Shown piece after piece: positions 623 to 7,945 of a DNA stretch of 64,000 nucleotides (position 1 is the first letter of the stretch; the number at the start of each line of letters is the position of its first letter). The DNA is taken from the NCBI GenBank assembly GCA_977020255.1, contig CDROCS010000095.1:1-64000 (forward strand), in the 5' to 3' direction. Position numbers and translations under genes: made by a program. Source of the DNA: Obrimoposthia wandeli. Lineage: Eukaryota. The notes under the pieces are model-generated. The model made no database searches, was not told the origin of the DNA, and saw only the letters and a list, made by a program, of their open reading frames with translations.

Positions 623-1414
623 CTAAGCATCACGGCAAACTTCATCAGGCCATTCAAACTCAATCGTAGTATGTTCCAGTTTAAACTCAGCCAGTTGCTG
701 CTTAATGTCTAATTTAAGCGCTTCTTGCTGCGTAATATCCAAGTATTCTTCTAGCGATAAATGCACCGTAAGTACGTGAGATTCGCCGTCTAGGGACCAT
801 AAGTGAAAGTGATGTAGATCTGCGACAAAGTTAAGTTTCAGTAAGGTCTGTTTCACTTTGTCTGCTAAGCCCGTATCGGGACTGGATTGGGCAAAAAGTT
901 TGAGCGTAGTCCATAAATTACGGGCAACGTTCACTAAAATGAAGAGTGTGAAAGCGATGGAAAGTAATGGATCGAGTATCGGAACTTCAGCAAACATAAG
1001 TACAATCGATACGATTAATACCGCGACCCAGCCCAACACATCTTCTAACAAGTGCCAGTTTAATACGCGTTCGTTTAAGCTTTCTCCGCCACTGAGTTTG
1101 TAAGCCGCAAAACCATTTACACAGACGCCAAATATCGCTAATAGAATCATGCCTTCAGCTTCTGGCATAACAGGATTGAAGAGTCGCGGGATGGCTGCTG
1201 TCATTACCCAAATCGATCCTATAATAAGGACTAGGCCGTTCAGTAACGCACCGAATAAAGATAAGCGGCGAAAGCCATAGCTGAATTCATTGTTGGCTTG
1301 TTTTTTCCCCAGTTTATTCAGTACCCAAGCACTGCCGATTGATAGTGTATCGCCTAGATCGTGTACGGCGTCTGACATGATCGCGGTACTGTTGGTTAGC
1401 CAGCCGCCAATAAA
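623..1414 (-). pseudogene. CDF (cation diffusion facilitator, CzcD/ZitB-like) exporter copy 1, 5'-truncated (lacks His-rich N-terminus and TM1)
   Basis: SDAVHD, SYGFRR, WHLLED and HHFHLWSLDG motifs; similarity to the copy at 5558-6504 stops abruptly at about 1414. Confidence 0.8.
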
Positions 1415-1586
1415 AACTAATAGGACCCAAGATAATGGCAAAGCAAAAATATAATAATGCCTTAAGATGGATGTCCATGTAGTTACAGTAAAATTAGGGT
1501 GTTTGTAAGGTACTGAAAGCTAGGGGGATTTCAATGATTTGGAATATGCGTTAGTTATGCGAACAGGCTAGTATTCTGATAATAAA

Positions 1587-1615
1587 TTGACAAAAGCGAA
1601 CGCTAAATATAGTGT
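1587..1615 (+). promoter_or_regulatory. Candidate sigma70 promoter (Pc-like) upstream of the cassette array
   Basis: TTGACA at 1587-1592, 17-bp spacer, TAGTGT at 1610-1615. Confidence 0.4.
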
Positions 1616-1692
1616 TTCCAGTATCAATAGCAGGGATGGTCGTATGATTCATAAGCCAAATTCTCTTCATTCGTCTTTCCCATTTATAAGGG

Positions 1693-1729
1693 GTTATGCG
1701 GCATTGGTTCGCATAACTGACTGTTAAGA
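1693..1729 (+). mobile_element. Candidate integron attI-like recombination site
   Basis: GTTATGC (1693-1699), inverse box GCATAAC (1711-1717), 5-bp spacer TGACT, core GTTAAGA (1723-1729) directly before the first cassette ORF. Confidence 0.55.
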
Positions 1730-1747
1730 GGCATCAAGGATTGAGTA

Positions 1748-2011
1748 ATGAAAATATTCCAGTGGTTTAAAGCAATGACTTTTGAAGGAAAGATAAAAAA
1801 AGAAATTTCTTCTATTTCTGCCGAGAATGGAAAGTTGGAGGTTCAGCTTCTCGATAAGAAAATTAATGGTGAGGATGCTTATCGTATTAATCTGACTAGA
1901 ACTTCAATTGCTTCATTTCAGTCTTTACCAATTGTTTTGTCTAGTAGCCAAATAAAAGAGCTTACTAATTCAATATTTCGAGAGCTAGAGCATAATGATA
2001 CAAACTCTTAA
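1748..2011 (+). CDS. Hypothetical protein, gene cassette 1 (87 aa)
   Basis: AT-rich ORF 18 nt after the core site GTTAAGA; its stop codon lies inside the matching inverse core TCTTAAC. Confidence 0.7.
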   Translation: MKIFQWFKAMTFEGKIKKEISSISAENGKLEVQLLDKKINGEDAYRINLTRTSIASFQSLPIVLSSSQIKELTNSIFRELEHNDTNS

Positions 2012-2072
2012 CATTCGTGATCGTGCCTACGGCACTGGGACGCTTTCGCGCCCCACAATATTGGCGTTAGGC
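2006..2072 (+). mobile_element. attC site 1 (67 bp)
   Basis: TCTTAAC ... GTTAGGC with internal hairpins GTGCC-TAC-GGCAC and GGGACGC-TTTC-GCGCCCC; the inverse core is the exact complement of the upstream core at 1723. Confidence 0.75.
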
Positions 2073-2082
2073 AGCATTTATT

Positions 2083-2535
2083 ATGGATCGTAGATATAAA
2101 AAAAGGATTGAACGTTATTGGTCCGAGATGGAAAATAAAGCAATTGGTTATTTTGACAATTTAGACTTATCTAGTTGGTTTGATTACGCTCACTGCCATC
2201 TAGACTGGATAGGGAAAGGAGACTCCCGCCCAGAAAATCGAGTTACGTGCTTAGAATTGGGATATAAAATATTCCAACTTTCTTTGAGTAAATGTGAAAC
2301 CGCAAAAATTGATATTCAATCTTGGTGGTCTGTACACGAAGAATCCTATGGTGATGCAATATACCTTCATTCTGAAAATGATAATGGAACCCCATATCCT
2401 TACAATTATGACGGTATCGTATGGAACACAAAAGAGAACGAATTACTTACGAATATTGTTGATTTATCTTTATACAAAATTGGCGTAATAAAAAATTCTT
2501 ATGGTACAACTTTTATTGTTGCGAAAAATGCCTAA
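2083..2535 (+). CDS. Hypothetical protein, gene cassette 2 (150 aa)
   Basis: ORF starts 10 nt after core GTTAGGC; stop inside inverse core GCCTAAC; conserved-looking WFD..H.HLDW.GKG and DAIYLH..N motifs of unknown function. Confidence 0.75.
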   Translation: MDRRYKKRIERYWSEMENKAIGYFDNLDLSSWFDYAHCHLDWIGKGDSRPENRVTCLELGYKIFQLSLSKCETAKIDIQSWWSVHEESYGDAIYLHSENDNGTPYPYNYDGIVWNTKENELLTNIVDLSLYKIGVIKNSYGTTFIVAKNA

Positions 2536-2577
2536 CAAAAGTTGCTGGTTCAGCCCCTCACAACAAAAACGTTAAGC
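2530..2577 (+). mobile_element. attC site 2, short (48 bp), probably internally deleted
   Basis: GCCTAAC ... GTTGCTGG / TCACAAC (L-box pair with one extra base) ... 6-bp spacer AAAAAC ... GTTAAGC. Confidence 0.6.
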
Positions 2578-2586
2578 CGTAAAACT

Positions 2587-3072
2587 ATGAAGCGAGTATC
2601 GAGTCCAAAAAAGTACAACGCCACCCTTAATGACTATTTGAGAGAGGTTTATTGTATTTGCCCTAAGTGTGGCGGGAATGCAGTAATAACTGCGGATTCA
2701 AAGCACGCCGTACCTTGGCAGCCACTTAATGTGTCGTTAATTTGCCACAACTGCCCTCACAGAGAAAGCTGGCCAAACTCCAGCTGGCAAAGTGATTTTG
2801 TAAATTACAATCCAGCAAGTGGTGTCGAGCCATATTTTGGTTATACCTTGTCACTTCAAATATCAATCAAGGGGCAAAGCTTTTGTGTGTTCAGCCCAGT
2901 CCACGCTAAAGATATCGCAGAGTACATAGCTGCCACTGATAGGCCGTCACCAGCCAACTCAAAGTGGGCAATGGTTAACCGGTTACCAACATGGGTAAAG
3001 CTCGCAAAAAACAGAAGCGTAGTTTTGCGTTCTATTGAAAAATTAACTAGTCATGCAGCACGTATGGCTTAA
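2587..3072 (+). CDS. Zinc-ribbon (CxxC...CxxC) hypothetical protein, gene cassette 3 (161 aa)
   Basis: CPKC and CHNC pairs, EPYFG and RLPTWVKLAKNR motifs; ATG at 2587 follows core GTTAAGC; stop inside inverse core GCTTAAC. Confidence 0.75.
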   Translation: MKRVSSPKKYNATLNDYLREVYCICPKCGGNAVITADSKHAVPWQPLNVSLICHNCPHRESWPNSSWQSDFVNYNPASGVEPYFGYTLSLQISIKGQSFCVFSPVHAKDIAEYIAATDRPSPANSKWAMVNRLPTWVKLAKNRSVVLRSIEKLTSHAARMA

Positions 3073-3130
3073 CAAGTTTAGGCAAACGAGCGCGATAAAG
3101 CAGCGCCCCAAAAGTGAAGGTTTAAGAAAT
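3067..3130 (+). mobile_element. Degenerate attC site 3 (inverse core intact, right end decayed)
   Basis: GCTTAAC at 3067-3073 is the exact complement of the core at 2571; GCGCCCC motif shared with attC1; no canonical GTTRRRY end. Confidence 0.4.
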
Positions 3131-3232: not shown

Positions 3233-3709
3233 ATGAATACAGAAGCACTTGTCATTAAATTAGAGGCTGATTTTCCGTTTGTTGACAAACCAATAGGTAG
3301 CTCCATTTCTTTTCATGCAGATGAGTGTTACCAATGCTCGTATTTAATAGATGATCTTTTAATTTATAATGGTAGAGAAATTCCGCCTCAAGCTATTAGA
3401 TGTATACATCAGGAAATGTCTTGTTTTTCAGCTAAAGGATGGCGCTGGGTGTTACCTTCATACTTGAGGTATTGCCTGACTGATGAGGCTAGATGCAATA
3501 AAATGGAGATAGAGTTTTTAATTTATAATCTTGCTCCTTCTGATGAGTGTAAAGCAGATACTCTTAAGCGCCTTTCTGACTTGAATAAATCTCAAGTTAA
3601 CTGTTTGATTGAATTTCTTAACTGGTGCAAAGAACAAGAGTATTGGAAAGATTATTGTTTAGAAGAAATTGAACAAGGGATTATGTTTCTAATTTCGATT
3701 GATATATAG
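3233..3709 (+). CDS. Hypothetical protein resembling the DUF6714 family (158 aa)
   Basis: AT-rich ORF with a FSAKGWRWVLPSYLRYCL motif; family resemblance from recall, not a search. Confidence 0.55.
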   Translation: MNTEALVIKLEADFPFVDKPIGSSISFHADECYQCSYLIDDLLIYNGREIPPQAIRCIHQEMSCFSAKGWRWVLPSYLRYCLTDEARCNKMEIEFLIYNLAPSDECKADTLKRLSDLNKSQVNCLIEFLNWCKEQEYWKDYCLEEIEQGIMFLISIDI

Positions 3710-4623: not shown

Positions 4624-5548
4624 ATGGTAAACCAAAAACAAGCGATGTTATTCGGGTTGGCTGCTGTATTGCTATGGTCGACGGTTGCCACGGCTTTTAA
4701 GTTGTCACTGCGCGAATTTTCTCCGATTCAGTTATTGGTGGTCGCGTGTTCTGCTTCGGTTGTCGTTATCGCGACTATTTTAATTGTGCAAGGTCGCTGG
4801 CATTTGGTTTTTTCGCTGAGTCGTGGCCAGTATTTGCAATCGCTTGGCATGGGGTTGATTAATCCGTGCCTGTATTATTTTCTATTATTTGGTGCGTTTG
4901 ATCGTTTGCCCGCCCAAGAAGCGCAACCGTTGAATTATACGTGGGCGTTGGTATTGGCTTATTTGTCGGTGCCTTTTTTGGGTCAGCGTTTGCGACGGGC
5001 GGATATTATTGCGGGGCTGATTTGTTACAGCGGCGTCGTTGTTAAGTACTGAGTGTGATGTGCTGGCAATGCTTTTCTGATCCTCGCGTTGGCCAGCTGC
5101 TAGTACGTTTGTTTGGGCATCTTATTGGATTATTGCGACGCGCGATACCCGTGACCCTGTGGTGGGGTTGTTTTTGAATTTTCTTTGCGGATTACCTTTC
5201 CTTATTGCTTTTTGTGCATTTACCGACGGTTTTGATTTTACGGTGGGGGCAAGTTTGGGCGCTGCGGTGTATGTGGGTATATTCGAAATGGGAATTGCGT
5301 TTGTGCTTTGGTCTTATGCGATGAAAAAGGCTGACAATACATCGAAGGTGAGTAATTTGATTTTTATCTCGCCGTTTTTATCACTAGTGTTTATTTATTT
5401 TATTCTTGGCGAGATCATTCTTTTGTCGACTTATGTTGGGCTGGTGCTGATTATGGCCGGGCTTTGGGTTCAGCAGCGCGGCCCGAAAGATCAGGGGTTA
5501 ACAGAAGACATGCCAGTTAAAAAGCATGTCGACGTTGAATCGTTATAA
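4624..5548 (+). pseudogene. EamA/DMT-family transporter, frame broken around 5040-5100 (pseudogene or sequence error)
   Basis: N-half LLWSTVATAFKLSL..AQEAQPLNYTW and C-half FEMGIAFVLWSYAMK..VSNLIFISPFLSL lie in different ORFs, separated by an indel-rich patch. Confidence 0.8.
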
Positions 5549-5557
5549 CGACATTTT

Positions 5558-6504
5558 TTAATGGGCATCTCTGCACATCTCGTCAGGCCATTCAAACTCA
5601 ATGGTTGTGTGTTCCAGCTTAAATTCTTCTAGTTGGTACTTTATTTTTTCTTTAAATTCTATTTGTTGTTGGGTATTTAAGGTTTCTTGTAATGTCAGGT
5701 GCACTGTTAATACATGAGACTCGCCGTCTAATGACCAAAGATGGAAATGATGTAAATCTGAAACACAATTAAGTGCTAATAAAGCCTGTCTTACATTCTC
5801 TGATAAGTCTGAATCGGGTGTCGATTGGGCAAACAGTTTTAATGTTGTCCATAAGTTACGAGCGACATTCACTAAGATGAAAAGTGTGAAAGCGATGGAA
5901 AGTAATGGATCGAGTATCGGAACTTCAGCAAACATAAGTACAATCGATACGATTAATACCGCCACCCAGCCCAGTACATCTTCTAACAAGTGCCAGCCGC
6001 ATCACACGTTCGTTTGGCCCGCCACCGGAGTTTTGTAGCCGCAAAACCATTTACACAGACGCCAAATATCGCTAATAGAATCATGCCTTCAGCTTCTGGC
6101 ATAACAGGATTGAAGAGTCGCGGGATGGCTGCTGTCATTACCCAAATCGATCCTATAATAAGGACTAGGCCGTTCAGTAACGCACCGAATAGGGATAAGC
6201 GGCGAAAGCCATAGCTGAATTCGTTATTAGCCTGTTTTTTACCCAGCTTGTTCAGCACCCAGGCGCTGCCGATCGAAAGGGTATCGCCTAAATCGTGTAC
6301 GGCGTCTGACATAATCGCGGTACTGTTGGTTAGCCAGCCGCCAATGAATTCGATAATGGTGAAGGCGAAGTTAAGGAAGAAGGCCCAGCCAATGCGGTTT
6401 GAACTCATATCCTTTGTGTGCGAATGGGTATGCGAGTGGGGATGTGAGTGGCTATGAGACTTACTGTGTGAATGGTCGTGGGGTGTATTACTTGAAGTGC
6501 TCAT
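5558..6504 (-). pseudogene. CDF metal exporter copy 2 with His-rich N-terminus, net 4-nt deletion at about 5997-6037
   Basis: HDHSHSKSHSHSHPHSHTHSH N-terminus; the two halves are in different frames; offset to copy 1 changes from 4938 to 4934 across the patch. Confidence 0.8.
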
Positions 6505-6700
6505 GATCTAAAACTCGGTATTTATCATTAAGTTGTATTGTTTGTATTCGCTAAGGCACTGACTGCAACTACTATTCATAAGATTAATAGATATTCAGTA
6601 TTACAAATCATTTCATTCATGACTCTGCTCTGGTTAGCATCCGTTATCGATAAAGTTTAAAGATTACAGACTGAGTTTACACAAGGCGAGGGATTTGACG

Positions 6701-7945
6701 ATGGATTTTGAATTAAGCCCAAAAGCAAAAGATTACGTTAAAAGAACCAAGGCGTTTATAAAAGAACACATCGAGCCGATGGAAGCTGATTTCTGGGCCG
6801 ATGTAAATGCCAAGCAGAATCACGGTGATTGGACAAAGTGGGAAGTGCCAGCGATTGTTGGTGAGCTAAAAGCGAAAGCGAAAGCTGCAGGCCTTTGGAA
6901 CATGTTCTTGCCTGATGATAAATTGGGTGCTGGCTTAAGCATCATGGAATATGCCTCTGTGGCCGAAGAAACGGGTCGCAGTATTTTAGCGCCGATGATT
7001 TTTAACTGTAATGCCCCAGATACTGGCAATATGGAACTCTTATGGCGTTATGGCTCTGAAGAGCAAAAAGCTCAGTGGTTAACGCCTCTGCTTGAAGGTG
7101 ATATTCGTTCAGTATTCTGTATGACAGAGCCTGATGTTGCGTCATCTGATGCGACCAATATGGCTGCAACCGCGGTGGTTGACGGCGATCAGGTTATTCT
7201 TAATGGCACTAAGTGGTGGTCGAGCGGTATTGGTGATCCACACTGCAAGGTCGGTATTTTTATGGCTAGTACCCCAGATGAGAGCAAAGACCGCCATCAT
7301 CAGCATTCTATGGTCTTAGTGCCACTTGATACGCCAGGAGTCGAAATTGTACGAATGCTGCCTGTATTTGGTGCTTATGATGCACCGCATGGCCATGGTG
7401 AAGTTAAATTCACGGATGTACGTTTGCCGGTATCAAGCTTTATCAGCGGCCCTGGTATGGGCTTTGAAATTGCCCAAGGTCGTTTAGGACCTGGTCGTAT
7501 TCATCATTGCATGCGTTGCTTAGGCGCAGCTGAAAAGTCAGTAGAGTTGATGGTTGATCGTGGTATGCAACGTACAGCCTTTCATAAGCCAATTATGAAG
7601 TTGGGTGGTAATGCTGAACGTTTAGCCGAAGCCCGTATTGCGATTGATCAGGCGCGCTTGTTAACCTTATTTGCAGCGTGGAAAATGGATAAAGTTGGGG
7701 CGTTAAACGCCATGACTGAAATCTCGGCGATTAAGGTCGTTGCGCCTAATGTTTTGCAGAAGGTGGTTGATGATGCGATTCAGATTCATGGTGGAGCAGG
7801 TGTCAGTCAAGATACTCCATTAACGGCTTTCTTTATGCAGGCGCGTTCTTTGCGTTTGGCTGATGGTCCTGATGAAGTGCATAAAGGTGTGATTGCTCGT
7901 ATTGAACTCGCTAAGCGTGGGTTCTTCAGTAAAAAGAGAAAGTAA
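6701..7945 (+). CDS. Acyl-CoA dehydrogenase (ACAD10/11-like subfamily)
   Basis: GLWNMFLP, FNCNAPDTGNME, MTEPDVASSDATN, AQGRLGPGRIHHCMR and LRLADGPDEVH motifs. Confidence 0.95.
   Translation: MDFELSPKAKDYVKRTKAFIKEHIEPMEADFWADVNAKQNHGDWTKWEVPAIVGELKAKAKAAGLWNMFLPDDKLGAGLSIMEYASVAEETGRSILAPMIFNCNAPDTGNMELLWRYGSEEQKAQWLTPLLEGDIRSVFCMTEPDVASSDATNMAATAVVDGDQVILNGTKWWSSGIGDPHCKVGIFMASTPDESKDRHHQHSMVLVPLDTPGVEIVRMLPVFGAYDAPHGHGEVKFTDVRLPVSSFISGPGMGFEIAQGRLGPGRIHHCMRCLGAAEKSVELMVDRGMQRTAFHKPIMKLGGNAERLAEARIAIDQARLLTLFAAWKMDKVGALNAMTEISAIKVVAPNVLQKVVDDAIQIHGGAGVSQDTPLTAFFMQARSLRLADGPDEVHKGVIARIELAKRGFFSKKRK

What the first reader, a model, noticed from the sequence alone, without database searches (positions are those of the whole stretch)
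1723..3130. Integron-type gene-cassette array with perfectly matched core and inverse-core pairs
Seen: three consecutive small AT-rich ORFs each start just after a GTT core and stop inside the exact complement of that same core: GTTAAGA(1723)/TCTTAAC(2006), GTTAGGC(2066)/GCCTAAC(2530), GTTAAGC(2571)/GCTTAAC(3067). Known: this reciprocal match is the footprint of circular cassettes integrated by IntI at G/TT. No integrase is present in the window, so this is a CALIN-type array. All three cargo proteins are of unknown function.
Basis: partly seen in the sequence, partly recalled or inferred. Interest (0 to 1): 0.72.

Follow-up and report, generated by a model that had tools for sequence, protein, structure and literature searches.

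The report
Orphan integron cassette array with leader
This is a real but ordinary relic of a bacterial gene-capture system (an integron): three small mobile gene cassettes sit behind a conserved docking-site leader, the recombinase gene is absent, and the cassettes' recombination sites are weak, so they are probably stuck in place.

Summary
Of 98 ORFs in the window, only these three consecutive ones show the reciprocal core/inverse-core match; shuffled windows give none.

Each cassette (1724-2066, 2067-2571, 2572-3120) matches foreign DNA only within its own G|TT boundaries, with different neighbours each time. ORF3 relatives lie next to true integron integrases.

Two qualifications:
- The three attC sites are weak. 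A covariance model built from 19 foreign attC sites scores genuine sites at about 13-36 bits (18-36 in the intI-linked arrays), but gives these 7.4 bits, 16.1 bits (partial match) and nothing. attC1 lacks its R''-L'' spacer and attC2 lacks its central stem.
- The array is headed by a ~250-nt leader (about 1472-1722) found in 17 other loci. It is conserved up to the G|TT crossover and followed by a different first cassette each time. In one locus it sits beside an intI, so it is an attI-type region.

No intI lies on the contig, and no cognate intI is in the assembly. The scan already noted a sister array in this genome (s1-204578, probably my contig C5781), with the same conclusion.

This is a new member of a known kind (CALIN / integrase-less integron). 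Cargo functions remain unknown.

The parts
1472..1722 (+). Conserved attI-type leader module. Strong homology covers 1577-1722, with diverged homology back to about 1472. It contains TTGACA (1587-1592) and TATAGT (1608-1613) separated by a 15-nt spacer, and the inverted repeat GTTATGCG (1693-1700) / CGCATAAC (1710-1717), 5 nt before the crossover.
   Evidence: 80% identical to C5781:97556-97706. The same element is in 16 metagenome contigs, conserved up to ...ACT-G|TTA and then divergent. In L133 it lies next to an intI. The left edge G|TTCGCC is shared by all copies. No Rfam family matches.
1723..1729 (+). First crossover core GTTAAGA. The G belongs to the leader and TTAAGA to cassette 1.
   Evidence: Homology to L119, L120 and L121 begins exactly here.
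1724..2066 (+). Cassette 1. ORF1 is 1748-2011 (87 aa, no family).
   Evidence: 88% DNA identity to L120/L121 over 1723-2013 and 80.5% to L119 over 1723-2072, each in a different array. Substitutions in the X13 contig fall largely at 3-nt intervals, which indicates a real coding gene.
2006..2072 (+). attC1 (67 nt): R'' is TCTTAAC, the L box is ATT[C]GTG/CACAAT, R' is GTTAGGC. The 4-5 nt R''-L'' spacer is missing.
   Evidence: 7.4 bits with model R1. The L119 orthologue has TCTTAAC-AAGC-ATTCGTG and C5781 site f has CTAAC-AAAAC-ATTCGTG. In circular form it folds at -13.5 kcal/mol with a paired R box.
2067..2571 (+). Cassette 2. ORF2 is 2083-2535 (150 aa, no family).
   Evidence: 90.7% DNA identity to L112 (2063-2558) and 81% to L108. 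42% protein homologues sit in arrays L109-L111 and end in the same GCCTAAC.
2530..2577 (+). attC2 (48 nt): R'' is GCCTAAC, the L box is GTTG[C]TG/CACAAC, R' is GTTAAGC. There is no stem beyond the L box.
   Evidence: 16.1 bits, but only as a local match that skips the L box. It folds at -3.0 kcal/mol in the array and -6.4 in circular form. The 91% identical cassette in L112 carries an attC of more than 85 nt.
2572..3120 (+). Cassette 3. ORF3 is 2587-3072 (161 aa, two CxxC pairs, no family).
   Evidence: 85.9% DNA identity to L105/L106 over 2566-3076. A contig of run X3 matches exactly 2571-3077 with unrelated flanks. Homologues lie beside IntI in L101 and L107.
3067..3127 (+). attC3 (about 61 nt): R'' is GCTTAAC, the interior is poorly paired, and R' is the non-canonical GTTTAAG.
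   Evidence: No full-length R1 match. It folds at -5.1 kcal/mol in the array and -7.7 in circular form. The orthologous cassettes in L105 and L107 have clean 55-61 nt hairpins.
3233..3709 (+). ORF4, a DUF6714 protein (158 aa). It may be a fourth, fully decayed cassette or simply the flanking chromosome; this is unresolved.
   Evidence: Pfam PF20461, E = 3.4e-9. A DUF6714 gene is a cassette in array L110. But no attC follows ORF4, and no homologue appears in any fetched array.

Best explanation
The locus is the remains of a chromosomal integron that has lost, or never had locally, its integrase gene. It consists of an attI-type leader (about 1472-1722) followed by three gene cassettes.

Shown:
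- Each cassette is a discrete unit bounded at G|TT. Each is found elsewhere with other neighbours, and two of the three families occur in arrays, one of them beside genuine IntI genes.
- The leader is a conserved module. In 18 loci it ends at the same G|TT and is followed by a different first cassette. In at least one relative it is the intI-cassette intergenic region.

Inferred:
- The cassettes were inserted one at a time by an IntI. The folded bottom strand of each circular cassette's attC recombined with the leader's G|TT, which left each cassette's first six bases complementary to its own inverse core.
- The ORFs, which have no promoters of their own, are now read through from a leader promoter.
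- The array is now largely frozen. No cognate integrase is present, attC1 has lost its R''-L'' spacer, attC2 has lost its central stem, and attC3 has a poor stem and a non-canonical R'.
For: - Coordinates confirmed and chance excluded.
- Cassette-limited homology: 1723-2013/2072, 2063-2558 and 2566-3076. Contigs from other metagenomes stop at the same junctions.
- ORF3 homologues are next to IntI (TIGR02249 453 and 433 bits, cut-off 265) and in an Aquipseudomonas array. ORF2 homologues are in arrays L109-L112.
- Sister array on C5781: eight or more cassettes, the same attC family, the same leader, and tetranucleotide r = 0.975 with C95.
- Model R1 finds 35 sites on the expected strand in four intI-linked arrays that were not used to train it, and 5 on C5781. 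The window sites score 7.4 bits, 16.1 bits (local) and nothing.
- Leader: 16 metagenome copies, attI-like divergence after G|TT, an IntI neighbour in L133 (366.9 bits), and attC sites downstream.
- No intI on C95, and the best assembly match to the L133 IntI is 48% identical.
Against: - R1 is my own surrogate model, trained on 19 sites of which about half are one Pseudomonas-type family. It is not IntegronFinder's model, and low scores may understate function.
- In circular form all three sites still fold with a fully paired R box. attC1 at -13.5 kcal/mol is within the range of genuine sites, and integrases tolerate much sequence variation, so mobility with an IntI in trans is not excluded.
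- The promoter call is weak: the spacer is 15 nt and the scan tool did not flag it.
- Whether C95's organism carries an intI elsewhere is unknown, because the assembly is a 1.35 Gb mixture and I could not bin it.
- Every intI found beside this leader is frameshifted or fragmented. That could partly reflect metagenome assembly errors.
Confidence: 0.8

Rival explanations
1. A functional CALIN. The three attC sites are unusually short but still recombinogenic, and an integrase encoded elsewhere in the same genome can excise and reshuffle these cassettes.
For: - R boxes are intact and exactly reciprocal.
- The L boxes keep a single bulged base on the R''-L'' arm in attC1 and attC2.
- All three sites fold with a paired R box in circular form.
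- attC2 reaches 16.1 bits.
- About half of known CALINs lie in genomes that encode IntI elsewhere (PMC4889954).
Against: - Scores are well below those of the 35 sites in intI-linked arrays (18-36 bits).
- attC1 lacks one side of the unpaired central spacer that its orthologues keep.
- attC2, at 48 nt, has no stem beyond the L box and folds at -3 to -6 kcal/mol.
- attC3 has no model match and a non-canonical R'.
- No cognate intI is in the assembly.
- The only joint seen in reads (2069 to 2537) is not at the G|TT positions and has a 22-nt side.
Confidence: 0.25
2. The leader-plus-array unit was moved here as a block by integrase-mediated recombination at the leader's left G|TT edge, rather than the integrase gene being deleted in place.
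For: - The left edge G|TTCGCC is identical in seven or more intI-less contexts with unrelated flanks: LysR, DUF3187, dCTP deaminase, an exonuclease, and the truncated CDF gene here.
- Two leader-headed arrays lie in what is probably one genome.
- In L123 and L133 the same neighbourhood holds the leader, but the intI side is swapped for PPK2 + LysR.
- The terminal R' here is GTT followed by non-consensus bases, as expected for insertion at a bare genomic GTT (bioRxiv 10.1101/2022.09.11.507474, seen only as title and abstract).
Against: - The invariant G could simply be the first base of the conserved module.
- The last site of the C5781 array has no GTT at all.
- No empty target site was found.
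- The window's flanks (a truncated CDF gene on the left, ORF4 on the right) are not two halves of one gene.
- That C95 and C5781 are one genome rests on composition alone.
Confidence: 0.25
3. A chance arrangement of GTT-containing heptamers around small AT-rich ORFs, unrelated to integrons.
For: Unconstrained folds of the three spacers are weak, and the model scores are low.
Against: Only 3 of 98 ORFs show the property, against 0 in shuffles. The homology is limited to each cassette. Homologues lie beside IntI. The leader is shared with 17 other array heads.
Confidence: 0.01

Closest known systems
CALIN (cluster of attC sites lacking an integron integrase; Cury et al. 2016, PMC4889954)
   Same: A same-strand row of small cassettes bounded by attC-type sites, with no intI within 4 kb or anywhere on the 103-kb contig. 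The cargo is uncharacterised.
   Different: A CALIN is defined by at least two attC sites that pass IntegronFinder's model. Here only one or two sites come close with my surrogate model. The array also keeps an attI-type leader, which the CALIN definition neither requires nor looks for, since attI is unknown for most integrons.
Sedentary chromosomal integrons (for example the Vibrio superintegron) and their decayed forms with inactivated intI
   Same: The location is chromosomal. The attC sites belong to one lineage-specific sequence family shared with the sister array on C5781. The leader occupies the intI-cassette intergenic position in relative L133. ORF3 has homologues in Vibrio arrays (L101, L102).
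   Different: There is no intI, not even a remnant, next to the leader. There are only three cassettes, and their attC sites vary in length (48-67 nt) and are shortened.
ΔattI-type gene cassettes of mobile integrons (Gonzales Machuca et al. 2026, PMC12901181)
   Same: attI-derived sequence is found away from its usual place beside intI, bounded by integrase-type junctions.
   Different: Those are resistance cassettes of class 1/2 integrons in which part of an attI replaces the attC. Here a whole ~250-nt attI region heads an array. I read only the abstract.
Cassette insertion at genomic attG/secondary sites (bioRxiv 10.1101/2022.09.11.507474)
   Same: It is a route by which cassettes reach chromosomal positions lacking intI, and it needs little more than GTT. 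The window's terminal junction is GTT followed by non-consensus bases.
   Different: That route describes single cassettes inserted outside att sites. Here the cassettes follow an attI-type site in array order. I saw only the title and the start of the abstract.

Membership tests
Integron gene cassette | Unit bounded at G|TT, with its first six bases complementary to its own inverse core (R'' RYYYAAC / R' GTTRRRY) | tested here: met
   There are three exact 7/7 reciprocal pairs, unique among 98 ORFs and absent from shuffles. GTTAAGA and the closing GTTTAAG depart from the strict consensus.
Integron gene cassette | attC site recognised by a covariance model of attC structure | tested here: inconclusive
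   Surrogate model R1 (19 foreign sites, 13 pairs) detects 35 untrained sites in intI-linked arrays. In the window, attC2 scores 16.1 bits (E about 0.01 in 5 kb, partial match), attC1 scores 7.4 bits (E 1.3), and attC3 is not matched. None is reported in the 133-kb search with default filters. IntegronFinder's own model was not available.
Integron gene cassette | Bottom strand folds into a hairpin with paired R and L boxes, an unpaired central spacer and extrahelical bases | tested here: inconclusive
   In circular form the R box is fully paired in all three sites, at -13.5, -6.4 and -7.7 kcal/mol, against about -10 to -20 for most genuine sites. The L boxes of attC1 and attC2 have one bulge. 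attC1 lacks the spacer on one arm, and attC2 has no stem beyond the L box.
Integron gene cassette | The same unit occurs in other arrays with different neighbours | tested here: met
   Homology blocks are limited to each cassette in L105, L106, L108, L112 and L119-L121 and in contigs of runs X3 and X13.
Integron gene cassette | Relatives found in arrays adjacent to an integron integrase | tested here: met
   ORF3 homologues lie beside IntI in L101 (453 bits) and L107 (433 bits), TIGR02249 cut-off 265.
CALIN (IntegronFinder definition) | At least two attC sites (model E < 1), under 4 kb apart on one strand | tested here: inconclusive
   With R1 only attC2 passes E < 1, and only in the local 5-kb search. 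attC1 is at E 1.3. A third hit at 2684-2742 inside ORF3 is not conserved in homologues. The definition's own tool was not run.
CALIN (IntegronFinder definition) | No integron integrase nearby | tested here: met
   The TIGR02249 search of the whole assembly lists 110 matches, none on contig C95.
Complete integron | intI gene adjacent to attI and the array | tested here: not met
   The left neighbour of the leader is a 5'-truncated cation-efflux gene (623-1441). There is no intI on C95.
attI site | Conserved sequence ending at a fixed G|TT, followed by variable first cassettes | tested here: met
   18 copies are conserved up to ...ACT-G|TTA, with at least ten different continuations. attC sites follow on the same strand.
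attI site | Lies between intI and the first cassette | tested here: met
   This holds in relative L133 (IntI 366.9 bits, start codon 259 nt left of the hairpin), and in L130, L131, L134 and L137 with fragmented intI. It does not hold in the window itself.
attI site | Bound and recombined by the cognate integrase | not testable with these tools
   This needs binding and recombination assays.

The most novel reading that the evidence does not exclude
The ~250-nt leader may be a mobile 'array head': an attI- and promoter-bearing unit bounded by G|TT on both sides, which an integrase can move together with downstream cassettes to new chromosomal sites. That would give a site-specific origin for the many integrase-less cassette clusters that have no intI pseudogene nearby.
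Probability: 0.22. Interest if true: 0.65.

Novelty: new member of a known kind. Interest (0 to 1): 0.4.

Why it matters
As a cassette array the locus is ordinary. It adds three uncharacterised cassette families, each with documented boundaries and foreign copies.

The more useful by-product is the leader. attI regions are known for very few integrons and are not searched for by standard tools. This one is defined at base resolution from 18 copies, with both edges mapped. Its recurrence without intI, at one fixed left edge in unrelated contexts, bears on an open question: how integrase-less arrays arise, given that about 95% of CALINs have no intI remnant nearby (PMC4889954).

The window copy is the most diverged of the leaders (about 80% identity, against 84-95% for the others). 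With its shortened attC sites, it gives a view of how such arrays decay into ordinary chromosome.

Tried and rejected
- Taxonomic placement failed. The acyl-CoA dehydrogenase at 6695-7945 gave best hits of about 74% in unrelated lineages. SecA reached at most 68% identity among 300 evenly drawn gammaproteobacterial species. An earlier scan note calls the organism Oleispira-like; I did not test that.
I did not work around it.
- Rfam has no family for the leader or the spacers.
- The promoter scan did not flag the leader, because its spacer is 15 nt.
- The leader has no similarity to the attI regions of the assembly's four complete integrons.
- The attC-like hit inside ORF3 (2684-2742, 16.5 bits) is a chance match. 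Its R' and L' boxes are altered in the 86% identical L105 copy.
- The apparent resemblance between the terminal sites of the window and C5781 arrays is not significant (local score 28 against a shuffle mean of 37).
- The single read joint 2069 to 2537 has a 22-nt side, comes from one contig and is not at G|TT. I do not take it as excision.
- PADLOC, PHROGs, Pfam and the protein atlas gave no function for ORF1-3.

Full report
**Setting.** The window is the first 64 kb of a 103-kb contig (C95) in a 1.35 Gb mixed assembly of 6,912 contigs. It has 42.5% GC and carries core bacterial genes, including what by size and order look like the dcw cell-division cluster and secA. SecA is at most 68% identical to any of 300 sampled gammaproteobacterial species. 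The organism therefore has no close relative among those sampled.

**Observation.** All six heptamers are at the stated positions. Each inverse core overlaps the TAA stop of an ORF. I tested every ATG-ORF of at least 60 aa on both strands for the same property: a 7-mer over the stop whose reverse complement starts with GTT and lies within 70 nt upstream of the start. Only these three consecutive ORFs of 98 have it, and 20 shuffled windows gave none.

GTTAAGA is not a strict GTTRRRY. The third cassette is closed by GTTTAAG (3120), and short-read contigs of the source sample cross that junction without gaps.

**Are these integron cassettes?** Comparative evidence is decisive.
- Cassette 1: blastn against contigs that encode homologues of the cargo shows homology over 1723-2013 (88%, L120/L121) and 1723-2072 (80.5%, L119).
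- Cassette 2: homology covers 2063-2558 (90.7%, L112) and 2067-2522 (81%, L108).
- Cassette 3: homology covers 2566-3076 (85.9%, L105/L106) (all).
- In each foreign contig the neighbours are different cassettes, and the preceding site ends in the same core (GTTAAGA, GTTAGGC, GTTAAGC).
- Contigs of unrelated marine and ice metagenomes stop at the same junctions. Run X3 matches 2571-3077 exactly, with unrelated sequence on both sides.
- ORF3 homologues lie beside divergent integron integrases in a Vibrio genome (L101, TIGR02249 453 bits) and in L107 (433 bits; cut-off 265). They also lie in a long array in Aquipseudomonas alcaligenes.
- ORF2 homologues lie in arrays L109-L112, one of which also has a DUF6714 cassette.
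- Substitutions in the X13 copy of cassette 1 fall largely at 3-nt intervals, so ORF1 is a real gene under purifying selection.

**State of the attC sites.** IntegronFinder's model was not available, so I built a covariance model (R1) from 19 non-redundant attC sites. They came from foreign arrays only (L103, L105, L107, L109-L112). The model uses 7 R-box and 6 L-box pairs, and the L-box pairs held in 17-19 of the 19 sites (one in 12 of 19).

R1 generalises. It finds 7, 5, 7 and 16 sites on the expected strand in the arrays next to the assembly's four full-length intI genes. It also finds the Vibrio repeats and the orthologous cassette-1 sites of L120/L121, all at 18-36 bits and none used in training. 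It finds five sites in the sister array on C5781 at 12.8-27.8 bits.

The window sites were not reported with default filters. With filters off:
- attC2 scores 16.1 bits, but only as a local match that skips the L box.
- attC1 scores 7.4 bits.
- attC3 has no full-length match.

Comparison with relatives explains the low scores.
- attC1 lacks the 4-5 nt spacer between R'' and L'', which L119 (TCTTAAC-AAGC-ATTCGTG) and C5781 site f keep.
- attC2 (48 nt) joins the 5' and 3' ends typical of its family but has no central stem. The 91% identical cassette in L112 has an attC of more than 85 nt.
- attC3 has a poorly paired interior, while the orthologous cassettes in L105 and L107 have clean hairpins.

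Folding of the bottom strands gives a graded picture. In array context the minimum-energy folds do not pair the R boxes (-12.5, -3.0, -5.1 kcal/mol). In the circular form, with each cassette's own R', all three pair the R box fully (-13.5, -6.4, -7.7). Most genuine sites fall between about -10 and -20. The sites are weak and atypical, but they still fold.

**The leader.** The 150 nt just upstream of the first core (1577-1722) are 80% identical to a stretch of contig C5781. That stretch also precedes a same-strand array, of eight or more cassettes with reciprocal matches of up to 8 nt and attC sites of the same sequence family. C5781 matches C95 in tetranucleotide composition as well as C95 matches itself (r = 0.975 against 0.980). 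The two contigs probably belong to one organism.

A scan of public metagenome contigs for the leader's 3' block found 16 more copies. All 18 copies are conserved up to ...ATAACTCACT-G|TTA. They then diverge completely, with at least ten different continuations. Model-detectable attC sites follow on the same strand. A fixed site followed by variable cassettes is the signature of an attI-type insertion site.

In L133 the leader lies directly beside a divergent integron integrase (366.9 bits; its start codon is 259 nt from the hairpin). L130, L134 and L137 carry homologous but fragmented intI, and L131 has a 97-aa stub. L133's own intI is frameshifted just before the catalytic-tyrosine motif.

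In the other contexts the left neighbour is unrelated: LysR, DUF3187, dCTP deaminase, an exonuclease on C5781, and a 5'-truncated cation-efflux gene in the window. Homology still ends at one and the same point...G|TTCGCCTATCAG, about 218 nt left of the hairpin.

The leader also contains:
- TTGACA and TATAGT separated by 15 nt, which is a weak promoter candidate.
- Several GTTCGC/GCGAAC repeats.
- A near-perfect palindrome, GTTATGCGAAC-TCG-GTTCGCATAAC, which includes core-like GTTATGC/GCATAAC boxes 5 nt before the crossover.

The window's copy is the most diverged. Its left half is barely alignable, and three pairs of the palindrome are lost. No Rfam family matches.

**Integrase.** No TIGR02249 match lies on C95. 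The four complete integrons of the assembly are on contigs with different composition. Their integrases are only 39-48% identical to the L133 type, and their attI regions are unrelated to the leader. The assembly holds only two leader copies, and both lack intI.

**Mechanism.**
- Shown: the cassette boundaries and modularity, the attI-type behaviour of the leader across loci, and the absence of a local intI.
- Inferred from established integron biology: each cassette entered as a circle by recombination of its folded attC with the G|TT of the leader, which produced the reciprocal matches.
- Inferred: transcription comes from the leader.
- Inferred: the shortened sites and the lack of a cognate integrase mean the array is now largely immobile.

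I put about 0.8 on this overall reading. I put about 0.25 on the sites still being mobilisable in trans. I put about 0.2-0.25 on the leader-plus-array having been moved here as a block through its left G|TT edge.

**Comparison and novelty.** The locus fits the idea of a CALIN (PMC4889954), although a formal model-based call would be borderline. It is equally well described as an integron that lacks its integrase but keeps attI. That is a known kind of element. An earlier follow-up in this scan reached the same conclusion for a sister array in this genome (s1-204578), which is very probably my C5781 locus. I arrived at it independently before seeing that note. Cargo functions remain unknown. 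ORF3 has two CxxC pairs and belongs to a widespread family of hypothetical proteins.

Noticed in passing
window 623-1441 and 5558-6504: Two cation-efflux (CDF) gene copies lie in direct orientation and bracket the leader, the cassettes, an SDR gene and an EamA gene. Copy A lacks its first ~45 codons and ends about 30 nt from the leader's left edge. Copy B is full length but split by a frameshift near 5983-5989. Identity between the copies is mosaic: 93% over 1094-1393 and 72% over 627-926. The scan already noted this as s1-208606.
   Followed up: partly
window 4624-5548: The EamA-type transporter gene is split into two ORFs (4624-5052 and 5159-5548), so it may be a pseudogene. Together with the broken CDF copy, this suggests a decaying region.
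   Followed up: no
G000:C5781:97556-102200 (L116/L117): A second integrase-less array with the same leader, eight or more cassettes, better-preserved attC sites (up to 27.8 bits) and reciprocal matches of up to 8 nt. It is followed by LysE and glutaminase genes.
   Followed up: partly
G000 contigs C253, C5466, C2866, C666 (L001-L004, L010-L017): Four full-length integron integrases (395-470 bits) sit beside large arrays. The first 10 kb next to them hold 7, 5, 7 and 16 model-detected attC sites. The contigs have 37-40% GC, so they probably belong to other bacteria in the same sample.
   Followed up: partly
L130, L131, L133, L134, L137 (metagenome contigs): Every intI found beside this leader family looks disrupted: a frameshift before the catalytic-tyrosine motif in L133, several frame changes in L130/L134/L137, and a 97-aa stub in L131. 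This could be real decay across the lineage or partly assembly error.
   Followed up: partly
window 2684-2742: A well-formed attC-like site (16.5 bits, with paired R and L boxes) lies inside ORF3 on the cassette strand. It is not conserved in homologues, so it is a chance match.
   Followed up: yes
window 2069/2537 in run X1: One contig of the source sample joins 2069 to 2537, skipping 467 nt of cassette 2. It has only 22 nt on one side, and the junction is not at the G|TT positions. It probably comes from another array with related attC sites.
   Followed up: no
window 1568-1735 and 1988-2071 in runs X13, X14: Leader-like and attC1-like sequences reach depths of 100-480 in an ice metagenome, against about 5 for cassette 2. 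They also occur in contigs of a marine metatranscriptome library. This leader/attC family is therefore abundant in cold marine samples. Transcription is not shown.
   Followed up: no
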